A stretch of DNA of 64,000 bases, taken from the sequence record ON529860.1; one strand, written 5' to 3'. Below, piece by piece: positions 30,575-42,647 of this stretch; within the stretch, counting starts at the first letter, position 1, and each line of letters starts with the position of its first letter. Made by a program: the position numbers and the translations under genes. Under the pieces are notes generated by a model. That model searched no databases. It was not told the DNA's origin and was given only the letters and a program-made list of their open reading frames with translations.

Positions 30575-31777
30575 GTGAGCACCTTTGCTGTTCCGATCCT
30601 CGCGATCGACGACGTCTACGATCACCCCAACGCTGATCGCCTCTCCATCATCCGCATTCGCGGCTACGAAGCCGTCGCCGGCAAGGCCGAGGACGGATCG
30701 CACCGCTTCGTAAAGGGGGAGCGCATCATCTACGTGCCCGAGGGCGCGGTGGTGCCGGCCGCGCACCTGAAGGCGCGGGGCTACTGGAACGAGGCCAAGG
30801 ACATCGGCCTGCTGGCGGGAACCAAGGGCAACCGCGTCAAGGCGATCACCCTGCGTGGCGTGCTGAGCCAGGGCCTGGTGTGGAAGACCGAGGCCCCTAT
30901 TAACGGGAATGCCGTTGATGCCCCGTTGTCGCTCCTTCACGGCCACGGAGAGAATGGCGTGCCGCAAGTTCGGCTGGCTGCGCTAGGCGACGACGTCGCC
31001 GACTTCTTCGGCATCACCAAGTACGATCCGCCCATCCCGCCGGGCCTGGACGGCGACGTCTTTGGCCTGTTCGAGGCGATGTTCAACTACGACATCGAGA
31101 ACGCCAAGGCCTTCCCGAACCTGTTCACCGAGGACGACGTCGTCACGGTGACGGAGAAGCTGCACGGCACCTTCTGCCGGATGACCTACATGCCCGGCAT
31201 CGAGCCGCGCGACGATCTGTTCGGCGACGGCCGCGTGGCGATCACCTCCAAGGGCCTGGGCGCCGACGGCCTGGTGTTCAAGAACACCGCCTTCAACCGT
31301 CAGAAGAACGTCTACGTCCGCAACATGCTGCCGCTGGTGGACCACTTCGTCTCGGCCTGCAACCAGGACGCCAAGGGCCTGACCGTCCACCTGATGGGCG
31401 AGGTTTACGGCGCTGGCGTGCAGGACCTCAAGTACGGCCGCACCGAAGACCAGGGCTTCGCCGCCTTCGACGTCTGGATCGAGAAGTCGGGCTTCCTGGC
31501 CGAGGTCGAGAAGGACTACGCCTGCATCGCCTTCGGGGTGGAGCGGGTGCCGGTGCTGTTCGAGGGCTTCTACGACAAGGCGCTGATCGAAGACTTCGCC
31601 AAGGGCGACACCACGATCGACGGCGCCGAGAACATCCGCGAGGGCGTCGTCGTGACCCTGACCGGCGAGCAGGACAAACGCCCTGACGGCAACGGCCTGG
31701 GCGGCACCCTGCGCCCGATCTGCAAGGTCGTGTCGGAAGCCTACCTGACCCGCAAGGGCGGGACCGAACTGCAATAG
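30575..31777 (+). CDS. RNA ligase, DRB0094/Rnl2-like family
   Basis: N-terminal HPNADRL..YVPEG..LRG.LSQGL. TEKLHGT adenylylation motif, GEVYG, AAFDV, REGVV, KVVS..YL. Confidence 0.85.
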   Translation: MSTFAVPILAIDDVYDHPNADRLSIIRIRGYEAVAGKAEDGSHRFVKGERIIYVPEGAVVPAAHLKARGYWNEAKDIGLLAGTKGNRVKAITLRGVLSQGLVWKTEAPINGNAVDAPLSLLHGHGENGVPQVRLAALGDDVADFFGITKYDPPIPPGLDGDVFGLFEAMFNYDIENAKAFPNLFTEDDVVTVTEKLHGTFCRMTYMPGIEPRDDLFGDGRVAITSKGLGADGLVFKNTAFNRQKNVYVRNMLPLVDHFVSACNQDAKGLTVHLMGEVYGAGVQDLKYGRTEDQGFAAFDVWIEKSGFLAEVEKDYACIAFGVERVPVLFEGFYDKALIEDFAKGDTTIDGAENIREGVVVTLTGEQDKRPDGNGLGGTLRPICKVVSEAYLTRKGGTELQ

Positions 31778-35991: not shown

Positions 35992-36078
35992 TGGAGGTGC
36001 GACCTGGACTCGAACCAGGATGAGGGTTTCCCCTACGGCTTATGAGGCCGCTGCCTATTCCAGCCGCGCCACCGCACC
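35992..36078 (-). tRNA. tRNA, anticodon CAU, long variable arm, U73, encoded CCA
   Basis: GGTGCGG/TCGCACC acceptor, GCGGC-CTCATAA-GCCGT, variable arm AGGG-GAAA-CCCT, CCTGG-TTCGAGT-CCAGG. Confidence 0.85.
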
Positions 36079-36782: not shown

Positions 36783-37118
36783 GGGGAACTTTCTGTTCCA
36801 AGGCCCGGCAAGCCGGGGTTCCCCATACCCGTGGTCGCCCTTAGGCGGCCAGGAGGACTCGTTCGCCAGCGGCGAAGTTGTCGTTGGAAGCTTCGACAGT
36901 TGTCAAAGTTGGATCGTGAGCGGCCTAAACCGCCATGCAGACCCTAGCACTCGCCATTCAATCCCGTCACCAACGTCAATCGATACTGTTCGGCCCCTCA
37001 AACCGCGCCCGTCTCCCATCATAGGAGGGGGATTGGTGGAGCCGACGGGATTCGCACCCGTGTCTTGCCCGTCTGTTTCGTTCTCTCTGCTTCGGACCGA
37101 AGTCCTCCGCGCGACGAA
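36783..37118 (-). ncRNA. ssrA: Circularly permuted (two-piece) tmRNA
   Basis: T arm plus CGGCTCC-A-CCA (37034-44) precedes GGGGCCG (36991-97) with a G3:U70 pair. Tag ORF 36891-36841 = ASNDNFAAGERVLLAA*. Confidence 0.92.
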
Positions 37119-37171: not shown

Positions 37172-37258
37172 TGGAGGGACGGGTGAGAATCGAACTCACG
37201 CCAGGCTTTCGCCAGGAGGATTTGCAGTCCCCCGCCTTACCACTCGGTCCACCGTCCC
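37172..37258 (-). tRNA. tRNA-Cys(GCA) with long variable arm
   Basis: GGGACGG/CCGTCCC-U73-CCA, GGGGA-CTGCAAA-TCCTC, variable arm GGC-GAAA-GCC, GTGAG-TTCGATT-CTCAC. Confidence 0.88.
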
Positions 37259-38375: not shown

Positions 38376-38381
38376 ACGCAA

Positions 38382-38415
38382 GAGCCCCGACCGATCACTC
38401 GGTCGGGGCTTTTTC
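38382..38415 (+). terminator. Intrinsic terminator
   Basis: AGCCCCGACCGA-TCAC-TCGGTCGGGGCT-TTTT. Confidence 0.9.
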
Positions 38416-38434
38416 TCGCGCCATCGTCTGTGTC

Positions 38435-39402
38435 TCGGCCGGCGCAGCGTCAGAAGGGTGTGTCGCGAGACCTCCGTCGCGGTCCCAGGGCACTGGGGCT
38501 CCCTGGAACAAACCTCACCTGAACGTGGCTTTCCTCCCCAAGGGGCTGAAGGTGGCGGGGTCCAGGCGACCCTGTGGGGCTCACACGGCAAGGCCTCTTC
38601 TCAATGCCAGGCATAGAAGTAGGCAGAGAGCATAGGTTCTTCCTACCCTCGTCATTGTCGTGGTCCGTTTTCCGTCTATCACAGCCTCTGGCTGCCGTCA
38701 CGCCTGGTTCCCATTTCTAGGACGGCGTTCCCCTCAGAAGACGGGTCCTGGTAGACCGCGTGTGGCTCTTCAGCGCCTGACGGAACTCGACGACGTGGTT
38801 GCCGGCCGTCTGAACTAGCGTCCCCAAGCGCCCCCATGGACATGCCGTAGGGGTGTGGCAGGGTCCGCCCCACGCTGTGTCAGGATATACGACAATGAAG
38901 AGGGGGAGGTCAATACCGCCTCTGGCGGCCGTCACGCCTAATCGTTCGTCTCGGGCGGCGTTCCCGTCAGGCCTGATTGTCCCCGGCCGAGGTTTGTTCG
39001 GGGGAGCGGTGCGGTCAATCACCCCGACTCACGTTCTCTCGTAACCCGACAGCACGGGCTTAAGCGCGCACGAGCGCTGTGATACAGTCACGCGGTGGTC
39101 GACCTATGGTGAGGTCATCGAGCCCAGTCGCGCAATCCCACCCTGTATGACGGGATTCATGGCTATCGTCAAGGGGTAACGGGCGCTCTCTCCCGGTCAC
39201 GCCTCGTCCTGATGTCTCAGCCGGCGTTCGCTTCAGACAGTACGGCAATCTCGGGGCCGTCCCACGCTCCCGCTGTCGTCGGGCCTGTTCCCAGAGGAAG
39301 GTCTACTCCAGGGCAGTCTGCTCCAGAGGCCAGGTCAGGGCGAACCCTGTGTGCTGCGCCTAAGGACCTTCAGCAAGATTGAAGCCTACCAGAACAAACC
39401 GA
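38435..39402 (-). ncRNA. Giant (~960 nt) ORF-less structured RNA
   Basis: Bounded by terminators. Four 8-11-bp perfect long-range complementarities and three copies of a covarying module. G:U polarity favours the minus strand. Confidence 0.7.
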
Positions 39403-39410
39403 AACGGGCA

Positions 39411-39444
39411 AAGAAAAACGGCCCCGATCCGAAGATCGGGGCCG
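39411..39444 (-). terminator. Terminator downstream of Ro60
   Basis: CGGCCCCGATC-TTCG-GATCGGGGCCG-TTTTTCTTT on minus strand. Confidence 0.9.
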
Positions 39445-39502
39445 CATCGTTCTTTACGCGACAGCGTAATTCCGCGAACGGATTACGAATACCCGTATTG
39501 GA

Positions 39503-40888
39503 TCAGCCGCCGACGAGGCCGTCGTCGAACTCCATCGCCTCGACCTCACGGATATAGCGCAGGACGCTCTCCGAGAAGCCGTCGATGTGGACCCATCCGT
39601 TGCCGTAGCCGATGCCATTCGCATAGCTGGCGACGTTGATCATATAGGCCTTGCCGGCCTTGGGCGCCGGCAGTCGCCCGCCGCCCATGCCGCTGCTCAG
39701 CGTTCCCGACGCCTGTTCGTCGGTGATGACGATCAGGCGGTCGCAGGCGAACTGACGGTTCACCACGTCCACGGCCTGGGCCAGGGCGGTGCCCTGGTGC
39801 GGCTGCGAACGGATCACCGCCTCGACGCCCGCCATGCCCTTGCGGGCCGGGACCTCGACCAGACCGTTGGAGAAGGTCACGACGCGCACGTCGCCCGGCA
39901 GGATCGCCGCCAGCGTCGCCGCCGCATCCATCCGGGTCAGGTCCGACTTTCCGGACAGTTTTTGCCGCATGGAGTAGGAGACGTCGACCATGACCACGGT
40001 CGAACCCTTCAAGGGTTCGGCCTGATCAATCGTCGCCACGAGGGCGTCGTCCAGCGCCCGCTCGAACGAGGGCGCATAACGCGCCGCCGCCGTGAAGCGG
40101 AAGGGCAGGACGCGGTCCGCGCCCTTGCGCGCGCGGATCGCAGCATTGACCAGATCGCGGTCGACGCCGGCCTGATCCATGTTGCGCAGGTTGCGCAGCA
40201 GGGCGAGGTAGCCCAGCTTTCCGTCGGCCAGCAGACGCGTGAACGTCGCCTTCTTGTCGGCGCCGCCCGACAGGGCGACTTCCCAGGTGTCGGGCGCCGT
40301 CAGTTCATTGTCGACCAGCTTCTTGTAGAGGGCCTCGCGGTCGTCGTTCGCCGGCTTGGCGTGCGCCAGGAACAGAACGTCGCGCAGGCGCACGGACTTG
40401 GCCCGGTCGTACTTGGCGATCTGATAGGCGTCGAAGTTGCCGAAGGCCAGCGACAGCCCCTTCTTCACCTGAGCGGACAGCGGCGCCTTCTTGCCGTCGG
40501 CGCGCACCGGGTTGAGCGCCCAGTAGAGGGCCAGGAACTCGCTCAGTTCATCGGCGCGTTGGATGACGCGGGCGATGGTCAGCGACACCAGGGCCGAGCC
40601 GGACCCGCGTTGGGCCAGAACGACGAGCAGCAGAAGGGGGACGTGACGCAGCTTGGCGTCCTCACGCGCTTCAATCGCGATCTGGGCGAGGGTCTCGACC
40701 GGAACTTCCTTGGCGAGGCTCTGGATACGGTCGGCGATCGACACGCCGCTCTCGTAGAAATTGTCTTCCCACAGCAGGCAGGACATGACCGACCGGCGCA
40801 GGGCCTGGGTCTTGGTCATCCGATCGGCCGGTGCGCCTTCATGGGTGCGCGCGGTGGTCGTCTTGGGCTTTGCGTTGATCGACGCCAT
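39503..40888 (-). CDS. rsr: Ro60/TROVE-domain RNA-binding protein with vWA C-terminus
   Basis: RSVMSCLLWEDNFYE, LRHVPL, QRADEL, YQIAKY, TWEVALS, YLALLRNLRNM, DVSYSM (MIDAS), VITDEQ. AGGAG RBS. Confidence 0.93.
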   Translation of the reverse strand: MASINAKPKTTTARTHEGAPADRMTKTQALRRSVMSCLLWEDNFYESGVSIADRIQSLAKEVPVETLAQIAIEAREDAKLRHVPLLLLVVLAQRGSGSALVSLTIARVIQRADELSEFLALYWALNPVRADGKKAPLSAQVKKGLSLAFGNFDAYQIAKYDRAKSVRLRDVLFLAHAKPANDDREALYKKLVDNELTAPDTWEVALSGGADKKATFTRLLADGKLGYLALLRNLRNMDQAGVDRDLVNAAIRARKGADRVLPFRFTAAARYAPSFERALDDALVATIDQAEPLKGSTVVMVDVSYSMRQKLSGKSDLTRMDAAATLAAILPGDVRVVTFSNGLVEVPARKGMAGVEAVIRSQPHQGTALAQAVDVVNRQFACDRLIVITDEQASGTLSSGMGGGRLPAPKAGKAYMINVASYANGIGYGNGWVHIDGFSESVLRYIREVEAMEFDDGLVGG

Positions 40889-40910
40889 AATGGGTCCCCT
40901 CCTCGTCTGG

Positions 40911-41088
40911 TCAAGCGACCAAGAGGTCGGGGAGGAACAAGCACGAGCCCGGTTCATCCGGTGCGTCTACCACTTCCGCCACCTGCACCAGAGATGCAGG
41001 CCAGGACTTGAACCTGGATACCCTTGACGGGCGCCGGCTCCAGCGAAGTATAGGCTCGTTACGCCATCCCCGACCTCGCGGTCAGTGA
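40911..41088 (-). ncRNA. Y-RNA-like element D: permuted class-II (Leu-like) tRNA mimic
   Basis: Terminal stem GAGGTCGGGGA/TCCCCGACCTC, variable arm, T arm CCAGG-TTCAAGT-CCTGG, looped acceptor CCTGCAT/GTGCAGG, D arm GCG-GAAGTGGTAGA-CGC. Confidence 0.8.
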
Positions 41089-41090
41089 AC

Positions 41091-41233
41091 TCCGGCGCTC
41101 TGGTAGGAAGGCGGGGGAACATGCGCGACCGGATGCGGGATCGAACCGCGAGACCGGGGGTTTGAATCCCGGCTTATCAACCAGCGATGTAACCGACCGC
41201 TCTCACCACCCGCCCACCAACCAGGGCGCCGGA
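41091..41233 (-). ncRNA. Y-RNA-like element C: non-permuted tRNA mimic within a long stem
   Basis: TCCGGCGC/GCGCCGGA closing helix. Core 41125-41200 with 8-bp acceptor, T arm GCGG-TTCGATC-CCGC, loop ATTCAAA, no CCA. Confidence 0.65.
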
Positions 41234-41241
41234 AAAGCAGA

Positions 41242-41396
41242 AACATGAAGGCGGCGGGGGAATAAGCGACCCCACTCTTTTTTAGGCGTGCTACCGTTAC
41301 ACCAAACGCCGCTAGGCGACGTTGCGGAATCGAACCGCTCATCCCGCTCCACATGCGATGAAAGTGACGTCTATCGCCACCCACCGCCTTCATGTT
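41242..41396 (-). ncRNA. Y-RNA-like element B (YrlA-type)
   Basis: 13-bp stem AACATGAAGGCGG/CCGCCTTCATGTT, T arm, looped acceptor, D arm GTGT-AACGGTA-GCAC. Confidence 0.8.
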
Positions 41397-41404
41397 GTTG
41401 GCTC

Positions 41405-41579
41405 AGAAGCGTGTGGTGGATCGACAGGGGAACCGGCGGAAAGGCGCCGTTTGGACTATCGTTCTACCAACTGAACTACCGCCGCGCCCGAAGGTGCGCC
41501 GAGTGGGATTCGAACCCACGACCTACAGTTTGCGAAGAAGGCCTCTCCCTCACCACCTGTCGATCCGCCACACGCTTCT
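41405..41579 (-). ncRNA. Y-RNA-like element A (YrlA-type)
   Basis: 24-bp terminal stem with one mismatch. ACTGT-AGGTC-GTGGG-TTCGAAT-CCCAC, acceptor capped by cUUCGg, D arm GTTC-AGTTGGTA-GAAC, ATAGT. Confidence 0.88.
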
Positions 41580-41763
41580 CAACCCTGTCCTAGACAGACC
41601 CGAGGACCCAACCCCGGACGAGGAACCGAAGTTCCCCGGCGGGATCAGGATCGTCCGGGAATAGGCGGAACCGAGAGCGGGGCCAAGGCCCCCACGTACC
41701 AAAAACGAAGAACTCGGTCCCTGTCGCCACGGACAATGACTGTGTGCCCGATCCCGGTTCAGG

Positions 41764-41780
41764 TGTCAACAACAACGGCA
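41764..41780 (-). promoter_or_regulatory. Promoter (-35 region) of the Y-RNA/Ro60 unit
   Basis: TGCCGT-N5-TTGACA. The -10 element is not clear. Confidence 0.55.
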
Positions 41781-41801
41781 GAAAAAGTTGAGATTACCGG
41801 C

Positions 41802-41835
41802 AAAAAGAAAACCCCCGGCCGAAGCCAGGGGTTTC
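41802..41835 (-). terminator. Terminator after repressor gene
   Basis: AAACCCC..GGGGGTTTTCTTTTT on minus strand. Confidence 0.75.
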
Positions 41836-41867
41836 CACGACATCTGACGTCGGCGGGGGTTCCAGGG

Positions 41868-42647
41868 TCAGACGCCGATCTTGCCCACCACCTTGCCCAG
41901 CAGGGTGAGGCTCTTGGCCGGAACGTCGCGGTGGCTGCGACGGTCCTGATCGAAAATGCGGTAGGGGCCGTTGGCGCTGGGGCGGGTCAGGTGGTCGACG
42001 CGGACCTCGCCGTCCAGGGCGTAGACAAAGGTGGCGCCGGTGGGGGTGGGGGTCGCCTCGCGTTGGACGAAGGCCATTTCGCCCGGTTGCAGGTTCTCGG
42101 CGAAATCGTCGATTCGGATCAGGGCGAGGGATTCGGTCGGCACGTCGAACTGGGTTTGCAGCCAATCGGCGAACATGGGCCAGGCGCGGGCGGCGGTGAA
42201 TCCCTTGCGGACGCCGAAGTATTCCACCTCTTGCAGGGTGACGAGGTCGTCGATCCCGTCGGCCAGCCACTGCGGCGCGGTTTGCAGCGCCTCGGCCAGA
42301 ATGTCTTCCTTCTGGGTGCCGAACGCCAGCCATTCCGGCGAACATTGCAGCGCCTCGGCCAGGGTCACGATCTTGTCAATGTCCGGCAAGACGTCGCCGG
42401 TCTCATACATGCAGTAGGCCGAGCGGGACAGCACCTTCCACTCGCCCTGGCGTTTGTTGAAGAACCTGATCTTGGCCGCCACTTCGGCCTGGGACATGTC
42501 CAGTTCCATGCGGCGCGACGTCATGCGCTCCTGCATGGTGGTGGGATTATCGATCATCCCCTTGAGCGAACCCTTGCGATGCATGGGTCCCTTCTCCTTG
42601 ACAACGGCAGACTTGGTCGTGCGGGTCGCTTCCAGCGTGCTCGGCAT
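41868..42647 (-). CDS. XRE/CI-like repressor (HTH plus S24-like C-domain)
   Basis: RRMELDMSQAEVAAK..YETG..P..I..LA.AL..SPEWL.FG. beta-rich C-domain. Confidence 0.8.
   Translation of the reverse strand: MPSTLEATRTTKSAVVKEKGPMHRKGSLKGMIDNPTTMQERMTSRRMELDMSQAEVAAKIRFFNKRQGEWKVLSRSAYCMYETGDVLPDIDKIVTLAEALQCSPEWLAFGTQKEDILAEALQTAPQWLADGIDDLVTLQEVEYFGVRKGFTAARAWPMFADWLQTQFDVPTESLALIRIDDFAENLQPGEMAFVQREATPTPTGATFVYALDGEVRVDHLTRPSANGPYRIFDQDRRSHRDVPAKSLTLLGKVVGKIGV

What the first reader, a model, noticed from the sequence alone, without database searches (positions are those of the whole stretch)
40911..41579. Head-to-tail array of four tRNA-mimic Y-like RNAs directly upstream of a phage Ro60 gene
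Seen: four self-closing elements tile the leader with gaps under 10 nt (A 41405-579, B 41242-396, C 41091-233, D 40911-41088). Each has a long terminal stem enclosing a T-loop (TTCGA/TTCAA) tRNA-like domain, and D ends just before the Ro60 RBS. In A, B and D the order is T arm, looped acceptor, D arm. Established: this permuted topology is that of YrlA Y RNAs, which bind Ro60/Rsr and are encoded beside rsr. Inference: one transcript supplies Ro60 with a panel of at least four different effector RNAs built on different tRNA scaffolds. I am not aware of such a diversified array, but have not searched.
Basis: partly seen in the sequence, partly recalled or inferred. Interest (0 to 1): 0.93.

Follow-up and report, generated by a model that had tools for sequence, protein, structure and literature searches.

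The report
Tandem Y-RNA array before phage Ro60
The leader of a giant Brevundimonas phage's Ro60 gene encodes five back-to-back Y-like RNAs, three of them rearranged tRNA look-alikes; the feature is real and conserved, but it is a phage version of the known Ro60/Y-RNA partnership, and such arrays turn out to be common.

Summary
On the minus strand, four self-closing RNA elements (A 41400-41584, B 41242-41396, C 41091-41233, D 40911-41085) tile the leader of a TROVE+vWA (Ro60) gene of Brevundimonas phage vB_BpoS-Papperlapapp. A fifth, smaller unit (U0, 41646-41739) lies upstream.

- **Shared module:** all five carry the same stem module.
- **Heads:** A, B and D enclose a T arm, closed acceptor and D arm (YrlA topology). 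D is built on a tRNA-Leu-like class II scaffold. C has a hairpin plus T arm, and U0 only a hairpin.
- **Conservation:** related phages keep the array with 5, 6 or 8 units. Covariation is strong (14-20 compensatory pairs per unit; 29 of 35 pairs across 19 units).
- **Family membership:** no unit reaches Rfam's YrlA threshold (best 27 bits against 69).
- **Distribution:** a model built from these units finds 2-5 tandem copies upstream of Ro60 in 18 of 29 other viral loci, in Xanthomonas and Rhizobium phages, and in chromosomal Caulobacterales rsr loci.

The reading as Y RNA is supported; the claim of uniqueness is not. Transcription as one precursor, processing and Ro60 binding remain inferred.

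The parts
41807..41836 (-). Intrinsic terminator of the upstream HTH (XRE-type) gene; it marks the start of a separate transcription unit
   Evidence: 13-bp GC-rich stem followed by a T run.
41764..41769 (-). TTGACA, candidate -35 box of the array/Ro60 promoter
   Evidence: Read directly. The same hexamer sits at the same place before U0 in Marchewka, Gurke, CcrColossus and CcrPW. The -10 box is not a sigma-70 consensus, so promoter function is inferred.
41646..41739 (-). Unit U0: a mini Y-like unit with the stem module and a simple hairpin head, and no tRNA-like domain
   Evidence: R1 model 33.5 bits, E = 1.8e-7, and the unit was not in the training set. Conserved in 5 phages, with 3 compensatory pairs in the inner helix. 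Its own fold z-score is only -1.7.
41585..41645 (-). Spacer with a short hairpin, at the place where Gurke and CcrColossus carry a further unit (U1). Its 3' part is the 5' strand of a candidate long-range helix
41400..41584 (-). Unit A: Y-like RNA with a class I permuted tRNA-like head (T arm 41503-41519, closed acceptor 41479-41502, D arm 41461-41476)
   Evidence: Rfam YrlA 27.1 bits, below the threshold of 69, model positions 23-85. R1 112.5 bits. Ortholog alignment A1: 20 of 58 pairs compensatory, 92% of cells paired against 44-49% when slid. The D-arm segment matches class I tRNA genes.
41242..41396 (-). Unit B: Y-like RNA with a permuted tRNA-like head (T arm 41324-41338, closed acceptor 41305-41323, D arm 41288-41302)
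   Evidence: R1 110 bits. Alignment A2: 18 of 50 pairs compensatory, 93% paired against 40-52% when slid.
41091..41233 (-). Unit C: Y-like RNA whose head is a hairpin (about 41153-41173) followed by a T arm (41135-41149). It is not permuted and has no D arm
   Evidence: R1 47.5 bits, E = 3e-8, not in the training set. Alignment A3: 17 of 48 pairs compensatory, 89% paired against 42-49% when slid. Weak tRNA-Sec hit of 21.8 bits.
40911..41085 (-). Unit D: Y-like RNA with a class II (tRNA-Leu-like) permuted head. It has a long variable arm (about 41020-41033), T arm 41001-41017, closed acceptor 40982-41000 and a D arm with a 3-bp stem (40963-40979)
   Evidence: R1 116.5 bits. Alignment A4: 14 of 55 pairs compensatory, 95.6% paired against 37-49% when slid. 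Its 5' acceptor/D-arm segment matches annotated tRNA-Leu genes at 87-96% over 22-31 nt.
40896..40904 (-). Shine-Dalgarno run of the Ro60 gene. It lies in the 3' strand (40890-40915) of a candidate long-range helix with 41583-41611
   Evidence: Read directly. Duplex -30.3 kcal/mol; the equivalent pairing ranks first of about 1000-1200 windows in Marchewka and CcrPW, third in CcrColossus, and is absent in Gurke. Suggestive only.
39503..40888 (-). Ro60 homologue (TROVE HEAT-repeat ring plus vWA domain), 461 aa, annotated 'RNA-binding protein'
   Evidence: Pfam TROVE 8.7e-12 and VWA_2 4e-6. PHROG 850 at 1.3e-61. PDB 9KOP/9L5Y at 1.4e-20 over residues 11-452. GenBank annotation.
39418..39445 (-). 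Intrinsic terminator closing the array-Ro60 unit
   Evidence: 12-bp stem, 9 GC pairs, T run.

Best explanation
The 0.87-kb leader of the Ro60 gene is a precursor for five Y-like RNAs (U0, A, B, C, D).

**Common docking module.** Each unit is built in the same way:
- a long terminal stem formed by its own 5' and 3' ends;
- an asymmetric loop, with a GGCG/GGUG-type motif on the 5' strand facing a UUCCCC-type run on the 3' strand;
- a 7-8-bp inner helix;
- a large internal loop with a CUUCG/CAUCG-type motif on its 5' side.

**Variable head.**
- A and B: a circularly permuted class I tRNA-like domain.
- D: a permuted class II, tRNA-Leu-like domain.
- C: a hairpin plus a T arm.
- U0: a plain hairpin.

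**Proposed working.**
1. The array and Ro60 are transcribed together from the promoter before U0.
2. The units are cut apart.
3. Each docks by its stem module on the outside of the Ro60 ring.
4. Its head then gates the ring or tethers it to other proteins. Candidates are an exoribonuclease such as PNPase, as in the Deinococcus RYPER complex, or tRNA-recognising enzymes. One protein would thus get several adaptors.

**Shown here:** the structures, their conservation and covariation, the shared module, and the strict same-strand linkage to Ro60 genes in phages and bacteria.

**Inferred:** co-transcription, processing, Ro60 binding and the partners of the heads.
For: **Structure and covariation.** Four ortholog alignments give 14-20 compensatory pairs each and 89-96% paired cells, against 37-52% when the partners are slid. 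Across 19 paralogous and orthologous units, 29 of 35 pairs show double changes and 93.4% of cells are paired against 42-51%.

**Shared module.** In all 32 units of five phages the 5' motif reads TGGCG (28) or TGGTG (4). The loop motif reads CTTCG (22), CATCG (5) or CTTCT (5).

**Independent recognition.** Units C, U0 and U1 were not used for training, yet they match model R1 end to end (47.5, 33.5 and 31-48 bits).

**tRNA likeness.**
- Sub-threshold YrlA hits in the window and in relatives.
- U8, A14, G18G19, A21 and the T-loop UUCRA are in place.
- The 15:48 Levitt positions read A:U in D of Papperlapapp and Marchewka and in U7, and G:C in D of CcrColossus and in A and U5.
- D matches tRNA-Leu genes.

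**Linkage to Ro60.**
- All 108 R1 hits in 48 bacterial loci lie on the Ro60 strand, nearly all of them upstream of the gene.
- The same holds in viral loci.
- The 64-kb window has no other hit above 17.4 bits.

**One transcription unit.** Terminators lie only before the promoter and after Ro60, with none inside. D ends 7 nt before the Shine-Dalgarno run, so Ro60 mRNA must include the array.

**Precedents.** Two Y RNAs processed from one precursor upstream of rsr, and RNase P cutting of a 7-bp acceptor (PMC4201824). Two Yrl RNAs upstream of a phage Ro60 that bind it and host PNPase (PMC12135203).
Against: - No expression, end-mapping or binding data exist for this phage or its relatives.
- No unit reaches Rfam's YrlA gathering score (27.1 against 69), and none does in 20 other viral Ro60 loci.
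- The exact GNCGAAN0-1G motif of Chen et al. is absent from the leader; only near variants sit at the expected place.
- U0 folds little better than shuffles (z = -1.7).
- I derived the helices tested from these same sequences, which favours them on paired cells.
- The sequences come from only three to four lineages, so many counts are inherited rather than independent.
Confidence: 0.75

Rival explanations
1. The array acts in cis as a structured 5' leader that controls Ro60 translation. Ro60 might bind its own leader, or a long-range helix might hide the ribosome-binding site. It would then not be a source of separate RNAs. This can coexist with the main explanation.
For: There is no internal promoter or terminator. 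The segment just 5' of unit A can pair with the segment holding the Shine-Dalgarno run (-30.3 kcal/mol). The equivalent pairing, with different sequences, ranks first in Marchewka and CcrPW and third in CcrColossus among about 1000-1200 windows. Gurke has a local hairpin over its Shine-Dalgarno run instead.
Against: In Caulobacter ginsengisoli the array is followed by a terminator-like hairpin with a U run before rsr, so units exist without a translational link. Published Y RNAs in such positions are processed into separate RNAs (PMC4201824). Other windows reach similar duplex energies by chance. Five different heads are more than a leader switch needs.
Confidence: 0.15
2. The heads are tRNA decoys or sensors aimed at host enzymes that cut or modify tRNAs (anticodon nucleases and the like). 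Ro60 and the phage RNA ligase would serve RNA protection or repair. The variety of scaffolds would then reflect the variety of targeted tRNAs.
For: Distinct tRNA scaffolds are used, Leu-like class II against class I. Unit U5 of relatives carries a canonical 7-nt anticodon-like loop, which annotators took for tRNA-Ser. An RNA ligase gene lies 9 kb away. Ro60 with a tRNA-like partner has been proposed as an RNA-repair platform in jumbo phages (PMC7824862).
Against: Units A, B and D of this window have no anticodon arm, because the Y stem replaces it. The hairpin loop of C varies from 7 to 9 nt between lineages. Chromosomal Caulobacterales loci have the same kind of array, so the design is not specific to phage counter-defence.
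Confidence: 0.1
3. The elements are decayed or rearranged tRNA genes from the phage's large tRNA set, with no link to Ro60.
For: The phage has 24 tRNA genes (PMC10070969) and a tRNA/tmRNA cluster 4 kb away. Annotators called 'tRNA-Ser' and 'tRNA-Gln' inside the arrays of relatives.
Against: ARAGORN and Rfam tRNA find nothing here. The arm order is permuted and the acceptor is closed by a loop. All units share a non-tRNA stem module that covaries. The array keeps its place before Ro60 from phages to bacteria.
Confidence: 0.02

Closest known systems
YrlA / YrlB of Salmonella Typhimurium and YrlA-like RNAs (Rfam RF02553; Chen et al. 2014, PMC4201824)
   Same: Encoded on the Ro60 strand within 4 kb. 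The ends pair into a stem. The head has a T arm, a closed acceptor-like stem-loop and a D arm in that order, with tRNA tertiary-contact nucleotides in place. Some loci hold more than one such RNA.
   Different: Scores are far below the family threshold (27 bits against 69). The exact GNCGAAN0-1G motif is absent. An extra inner helix and a large internal loop separate the docking stem from the tRNA-like head. There are five units rather than one or two. One head is class II Leu-like, and two heads are not permuted tRNA mimics at all.
Mycobacterium smegmatis YrlA and YrlB
   Same: Both lie upstream of rsr, are processed from a single precursor, and are bound by Rsr. [quoted passage not shown] Units A, B and D here have acceptor analogues of at least 7 pair positions.
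   Different: Two units there against five here. Processing and binding are shown there and only inferred here.
Deinococcus radiodurans Yrn1/Yrn2 and the four small RNAs upstream of rsr; the RYPER complex
   Same: A cluster of several small RNAs upstream of the Ro60 gene. The Y RNA tethers Ro60 to PNPase (PMC4201824).
   Different: Yrn1 has a different arm order and no full D arm. No sequence similarity was found here.
Thermus phage phiLo Ro60 with Yrl1 and Yrl2 (PMC12135203; PDB 9KOP, 9L5Y)
   Same: A phage Ro60, the best solved relative of this protein, with Y-like RNAs directly upstream. They bind the protein and host PNPase in vitro.
   Different: Two units, described as stem-bulge-stem with a CGAA motif. 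No tRNA-like heads are reported.
YrlA-like RNAs of Caulobacter phage CcrColossus (cited in PMC12135203 from Chen et al. 2014)
   Same: The same phage subfamily and the same locus. Its Ro60 is 69% identical.
   Different: The published table is not held, so the number of RNAs listed is unknown. Three of its eight units give Rfam YrlA hits that would plausibly pass the authors' cut-off (my inference). The eight-unit array as such was not found described in the papers searched.

Membership tests
YrlA (Rfam RF02553; Chen et al. 2014) | Encoded within 4 kb of a Ro60 ortholog on the same strand | tested here: met
   The units end 23 nt before the Ro60 ATG, on the same strand.
YrlA (Rfam RF02553; Chen et al. 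2014) | T arm, closed acceptor-like stem-loop and D arm in this order (permuted tRNA-like domain) | tested here: met
   Met for A, B and D. Not met for C (hairpin plus T arm) or U0 (hairpin only).
YrlA (Rfam RF02553; Chen et al. 2014) | Nucleotides of tRNA tertiary contacts (U8, A14, G18G19, T-loop UUCRA, 15:48 pair able to covary) | tested here: met
   Read in A and D. The 15:48 positions read A:U or G:C in different units. In B the 15:48 pair is unclear.
YrlA (Rfam RF02553; Chen et al. 2014) | GNCGAAN0-1G motif near the 5' end | tested here: not met
   There is no exact match in 40890-41800(-). At the expected place stand GGCGATAG (B), GGTGAGAG (C) and GGCGTAACG (D). Relatives mostly have GGCGTAG, one letter off.
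YrlA (Rfam RF02553; Chen et al. 2014) | Score at or above Rfam's gathering threshold (69 bits) | tested here: not met
   Only A matches, at 27.1 bits. Relatives reach 29.9-42.3 bits. None of 20 other viral Ro60 loci passes.
YrlA (Rfam RF02553; Chen et al. 2014) | Carries tRNA-type modifications (pseudouridine 55, dihydrouridine) | not testable with these tools
   Needs RNA from infected cells.
Y RNA (general) | 5' and 3' ends pair into a long stem that holds a conserved, interrupted helix; a large internal loop lies above it | tested here: met
   Outer stems are 98.7% paired, with 9 of 12 pairs compensatory. The inner helix has 7 of 7 pairs compensatory. The interrupted module is conserved in 32 of 32 units.
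Y RNA (general) | Bound by Ro60 | not testable with these tools
   Supported only by strict genomic linkage.
tRNA gene | Canonical cloverleaf with free acceptor ends and an anticodon arm, detected by tRNA finders | tested here: not met
   ARAGORN finds none in the region. There is no Rfam tRNA hit at threshold.
Ro60 / TROVE protein (the adjacent gene) | TROVE HEAT-repeat ring followed by a vWA domain | tested here: met
   Pfam TROVE 8.7e-12 and VWA_2 4e-6. PDB 9KOP/9L5Y at 1.4e-20 over residues 11-452.

The most novel reading that the evidence does not exclude
The array is a library of adaptors expressed with Ro60 from one transcript. Each head, built on a different tRNA scaffold, directs the same Ro60 ring to a different host tRNA-handling or RNA-degrading enzyme, or decoys it. 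A long-range helix that brackets the array and covers the ribosome-binding site ties Ro60 translation to excision of the RNAs. Phages would have expanded this library (5-8 units) beyond the 2-5 of their hosts' order as an infection-specific tool.
Probability: 0.15. Interest if true: 0.8.

Novelty: new variant of a known kind. Interest (0 to 1): 0.5.

Why it matters
What the tRNA-like module of bacterial Y RNAs is for remains an open question (PMC4201824).

**A natural comparison set.** One Ro60 protein sits next to five to eight RNAs that share a docking module but differ in their heads:
- class I tRNA-like;
- class II Leu-like;
- hairpin plus T arm;
- plain hairpin.

The set is repeated in several phage lineages and in the host order. 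Which head goes with which partner could therefore be read from expression and co-purification data.

**Annotation gaps.**
- About 0.9 kb of this genome is unannotated.
- The same units are called tRNA-Ser or tRNA-Gln in relatives.
- Rfam's YrlA threshold misses all phage loci examined here.

Tried and rejected
**Searches and tests that did not help**
- ARAGORN and Rfam at gathering thresholds found nothing in the region.
- ORFs overlapping the array have no Pfam or PHROG match, so a coding explanation is rejected.
- Unit-by-unit orthology between the phage and Caulobacterales arrays: blastn shows only the shared module and generic tRNA-like parts. I therefore do not claim that the whole array was captured from a host.
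- tRNA identity of unit B: no informative match.
- Unit C as an anticodon mimic: the hairpin loop is 7, 8 or 9 nt in different lineages and the tRNA-Sec hit is weak (21.8 bits), so this is left open.
- The candidate long-range helix is not top-ranked in every phage and is absent in Gurke, so I report it only as a lead.

**Sources not available**
- The supplement of Chen et al. 2014 and the 2020 Annual Review are not held.

**Technical failures**
- One script failed on missing files, one on a regular expression, and one timed out.

The tRNA-Leu likeness rests alone.

No consensus of a unit or of the element was built or used. The consensus lines printed by the tools were not used.
Full report
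**Source and setting.** The window is part of Brevundimonas phage vB_BpoS-Papperlapapp (ON529860.1, 356,874 bp, Dolichocephalovirinae; 100% match). Window position equals record position minus 248,000. The finding lies on the minus strand.

It sits between an HTH (XRE-type) gene (41868-42647; Pfam HTH_3) and a 461-aa gene (39503-40888). The second gene carries a TROVE domain (8.7e-12) and a vWA domain. It matches PHROG 850 'RNA-binding protein' (1.3e-61). Its best solved relative is the Ro60 of Thermus phage phiLo (9KOP/9L5Y, 1.4e-20 over residues 11-452).

GenBank annotates nothing in the 979 nt between the two genes. The genome paper mentions neither Ro60 nor Y RNAs (PMC10070969).

**The observation.**
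- The stretch 40890-41600(-) folds far better than dinucleotide shuffles (z = -9.65).
- Each unit alone has a z-score of -4.5 to -6.2. Five coding controls on the same strand gave -3.5 to +0.7.
- The minus-strand RNA is more stable than its complement (-430.9 against -383.7 kcal/mol).
- All four units hold a T arm with a UUCRA-type loop.
- In A, B and D the T arm is followed by a closed acceptor-like hairpin and then a D arm.
- For A this core matches positions 23-85 of Rfam's YrlA model (27.1 bits, E = 0.0024, gathering score 69).
- ARAGORN finds no tRNA there.
- The overlapping ORFs match no protein family.

**A shared module and a fifth unit.** I read the homologous leaders of Marchewka (91% identical), Gurke and Kikimora (73%) and Caulobacter phages CcrColossus and CcrPW (72%). 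Every unit has the same frame:
1. an outer stem;
2. two G-C pairs after one unpaired base;
3. a GGCG-type motif, as in GGUGGCGUAG of CcrColossus unit U2 or GAUGGCGUAACG of window unit D;
4. an inner helix of 7-8 bp;
5. a loop that starts with a CUUCG-type motif;
6. the head;
7. the return strand of the inner helix;
8. a UUCCCC-type run that pairs back to the Gs before the GGCG motif.

Among 32 units of five phages the first motif reads TGGCG in 28 and TGGTG in 4. The loop motif reads CTTCG in 22, CATCG in 5 and CTTCT in 5.

The same frame, with only a hairpin as its head, stands directly after a conserved TTGACA box at 41646-41739 (unit U0).

Unit counts are 5 in Papperlapapp, Kabachok, Marchewka and Bambus, 6 in Gurke and Kikimora, and 8 in CcrColossus and CcrPW.

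**Covariation.** RNAalifold on ortholog sets gave the following.

| Unit | Pairs with changes on both sides | Total pairs |
|---|---|---|
| A | 20 | 58 |
| B | 18 | 50 |
| C | 17 | 48 |
| D | 14 | 55 |

Counting on those structures gave 89-96% paired cells, against 37-52% when the partners were slid by 1-3 columns. It gave 14-20 doubly changed pairs against 0-8 when slid. No shuffle in 500 reached the observed covariation score.

I then aligned the 19 units of the T arm / acceptor / D arm type together and imposed one hand-derived structure:
- 93.4% of cells were paired, against 42-51% when slid;
- 29 of 35 pairs had changes on both sides;
- this included all 7 pairs of the inner helix and all 7 pairs of the acceptor analogue.

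Caveats:
- I derived that structure from these sequences.
- The sequences represent only three or four lineages.
- U0 has 3 compensatory pairs in its inner helix, but its fold z-score is weak (-1.7).

**The heads.**

*Unit A.* It shows U8, A14, G18G19, A21, a 5-bp T stem and an acceptor analogue of 7 pair positions, one of them mismatched.

*Unit D.* It has a long extra hairpin between the closing helix and the T arm, and a 3-bp D stem with a large loop. Its 5' acceptor/D-arm segment matches phage genes annotated tRNA-Leu at 87-96% identity over 22-31 nt. These include tRNA-Leu genes of Caulobacter phages. The same segment of A matches class I tRNA genes (His, Met, Asn, Ile). B gave no informative match.

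*The 15:48 positions.* They read A:U in D of Papperlapapp and Marchewka and in U7, and G:C in D of CcrColossus and in A and U5. This is the compensation that Chen et al. described for YrlA (PMC4201824).

*Unit C.* It differs from the others. Its inner helix leads into the conserved loop motif, then a hairpin whose loop is 7-9 nt depending on lineage, then a T arm, with no D arm. In C the docking stem would leave the tRNA-like body at the acceptor end, whereas in A, B and D it leaves at the anticodon end. This last point is my inference.

**How general it is.** I built a covariance model (R1: 147 positions, 35 pairs) from the 19 units.

In the 64-kb window:

| Hit | Bits | Note |
|---|---|---|
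| D | 116.5 | in training set |
| A | 112.5 | in training set |
| B | 110 | in training set |
| C | 47.5 | untrained |
| U0 | 33.5 | untrained, filters off |
| Any other hit | at most 17.4 | |

In the 29 IMG/VR loci with Ro60 homologues other than the two copies of CcrColossus and CcrPW (identities 25-57%):
- 27 have at least one hit at E <= 0.01 on the Ro60 strand;
- 18 have two or more;
- most hits are tandem and end just before the gene, with up to five in L022.

Further points on the viral loci:
- Short units of 63-78 nt that keep only the module occur in L019.
- None of 20 of these loci reaches Rfam's YrlA threshold.

Among cultured phages:
- Xanthomonas phage Sopo (44 kb) has 4 units in an unannotated 670-nt gap.
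- Rhizobium phage RHph_TM61 has 5 units.
- crAss001 has one weak hit, downstream of its Ro60 gene.

In bacterial genomes:
- The closest Ro60 proteins (59-65% identical) belong to Caulobacterales, the order of the phage's host.
- All 108 R1 hits in 48 loci lie on the Ro60 strand, nearly all of them upstream of the gene.
- 33 loci have two or more hits, and up to four.

In Caulobacter ginsengisoli I read five units by eye. That locus is flanked by MeaB and a B12-binding protein, so it is chromosomal. blastn shows no unit-by-unit orthology between the phage and bacterial arrays.

**Transcription unit (inferred).**
- On the minus strand, strong terminators stand only after the HTH gene (41807-41836) and after Ro60 (39418-39445).
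- A TTGACA box (41764-41769) is conserved before U0 in all five phages read.
- D ends 7 nt before the Shine-Dalgarno run.
- The only promoter-like match near the gene overlaps the start codon.

Ro60 mRNA must therefore be transcribed through the array.

**A lead: a long-range helix.** In the unrestricted fold the segment just 5' of unit A pairs with the segment that holds the Shine-Dalgarno run (-30.3 kcal/mol). Equivalent pairings with different sequences rank as follows among about 1000-1200 windows:
- first in Marchewka and CcrPW;
- third in CcrColossus;
- not found in Gurke.

This is a lead, not a result.

**Comparison with what is known.** Chen et al. 2014 (PMC4201824) reported:
- YrlA-like RNAs next to Ro60 in 254 bacteria and 22 phages, sometimes several per locus;
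- that M. smegmatis YrlA and YrlB are processed from one precursor upstream of rsr;
- four small RNAs upstream of D. radiodurans rsr.

A 2025 paper found two Y-like RNAs upstream of a phage Ro60. They bind the protein and host PNPase. The paper cites CcrColossus among phages with such RNAs (PMC12135203).

The kind of feature is therefore known. I did not find the following described in the searchable literature:
- arrays of five to eight units;
- the common docking module with its extra helix and loop;
- the mixture of class I, class II and non-permuted heads;
- the prevalence of such arrays.

The supplement that lists the CcrColossus RNAs is not held.

**Verdict.** The YrlA-like reading is supported as a way of working. 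Strict membership of RF02553 fails on score and on the exact 5' motif. The claim of singularity is not supported. I rate it a new variant of a known kind, with interest 0.5.

Noticed in passing
window 36841-37096 (-): A two-piece (permuted) tmRNA matches Rfam tmRNA_permuted at 60.2 bits (threshold 47). It is not annotated in ON529860.1, and the genome paper states that no tmRNA was detected with ARAGORN.
   Followed up: partly
window 37172-37258 (-) and 35992-36078 (-): tRNA-Cys and one tRNA-Met are 87 nt long, with an extra arm of about 12-13 nt in the variable region. This is unusual for class I tRNAs.
   Followed up: no
L003 2989-3063, L037 1688-1762, L004 2579-2646: The 'tRNA-Ser' of phages Gurke and Kikimora and the 'tRNA-Gln' of CcrColossus lie inside Y-like units (U5 and U3) of their Ro60 leaders. 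They are probably misannotations.
   Followed up: partly
window 41583-41611 with 40890-40915 (-): A candidate long-range helix brackets units A-D and covers the Ro60 Shine-Dalgarno run. Equivalent pairings with different sequences occur in Marchewka, CcrColossus and CcrPW, but not in Gurke.
   Followed up: partly
window 38376-39417: About 1 kb between the Ro60 terminator and the next annotated gene is unannotated. It has no Rfam or R1 hit, and the 101-aa ORF at 38717-39022(-) has no Pfam or PHROG match.
   Followed up: no
window 30575-31777 (+): An RNA ligase gene (Pfam RNA_ligase 6.3e-17) lies about 9 kb from the Ro60 locus. It may be relevant to an RNA-repair reading.
   Followed up: no
L043 1617-1635 and about 2290; L048 about 2080-2100: Chromosomal Caulobacterales arrays are flanked by a palindrome of the type TTGTTGCA...TGCAACAA, possibly an operator. 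In L043 a terminator-like hairpin with a U run separates the array from rsr. The phage promoter region begins with GTTGTTGTTGACA.
   Followed up: no
L009, L018, L029, L091: Many phage Ro60 genes sit next to tRNA gene clusters. Examples are 13 tRNA hits in L009 and tRNA-Leu genes on both sides of the Ro60 locus in Rhizobium phage RHph_TM61.
   Followed up: no
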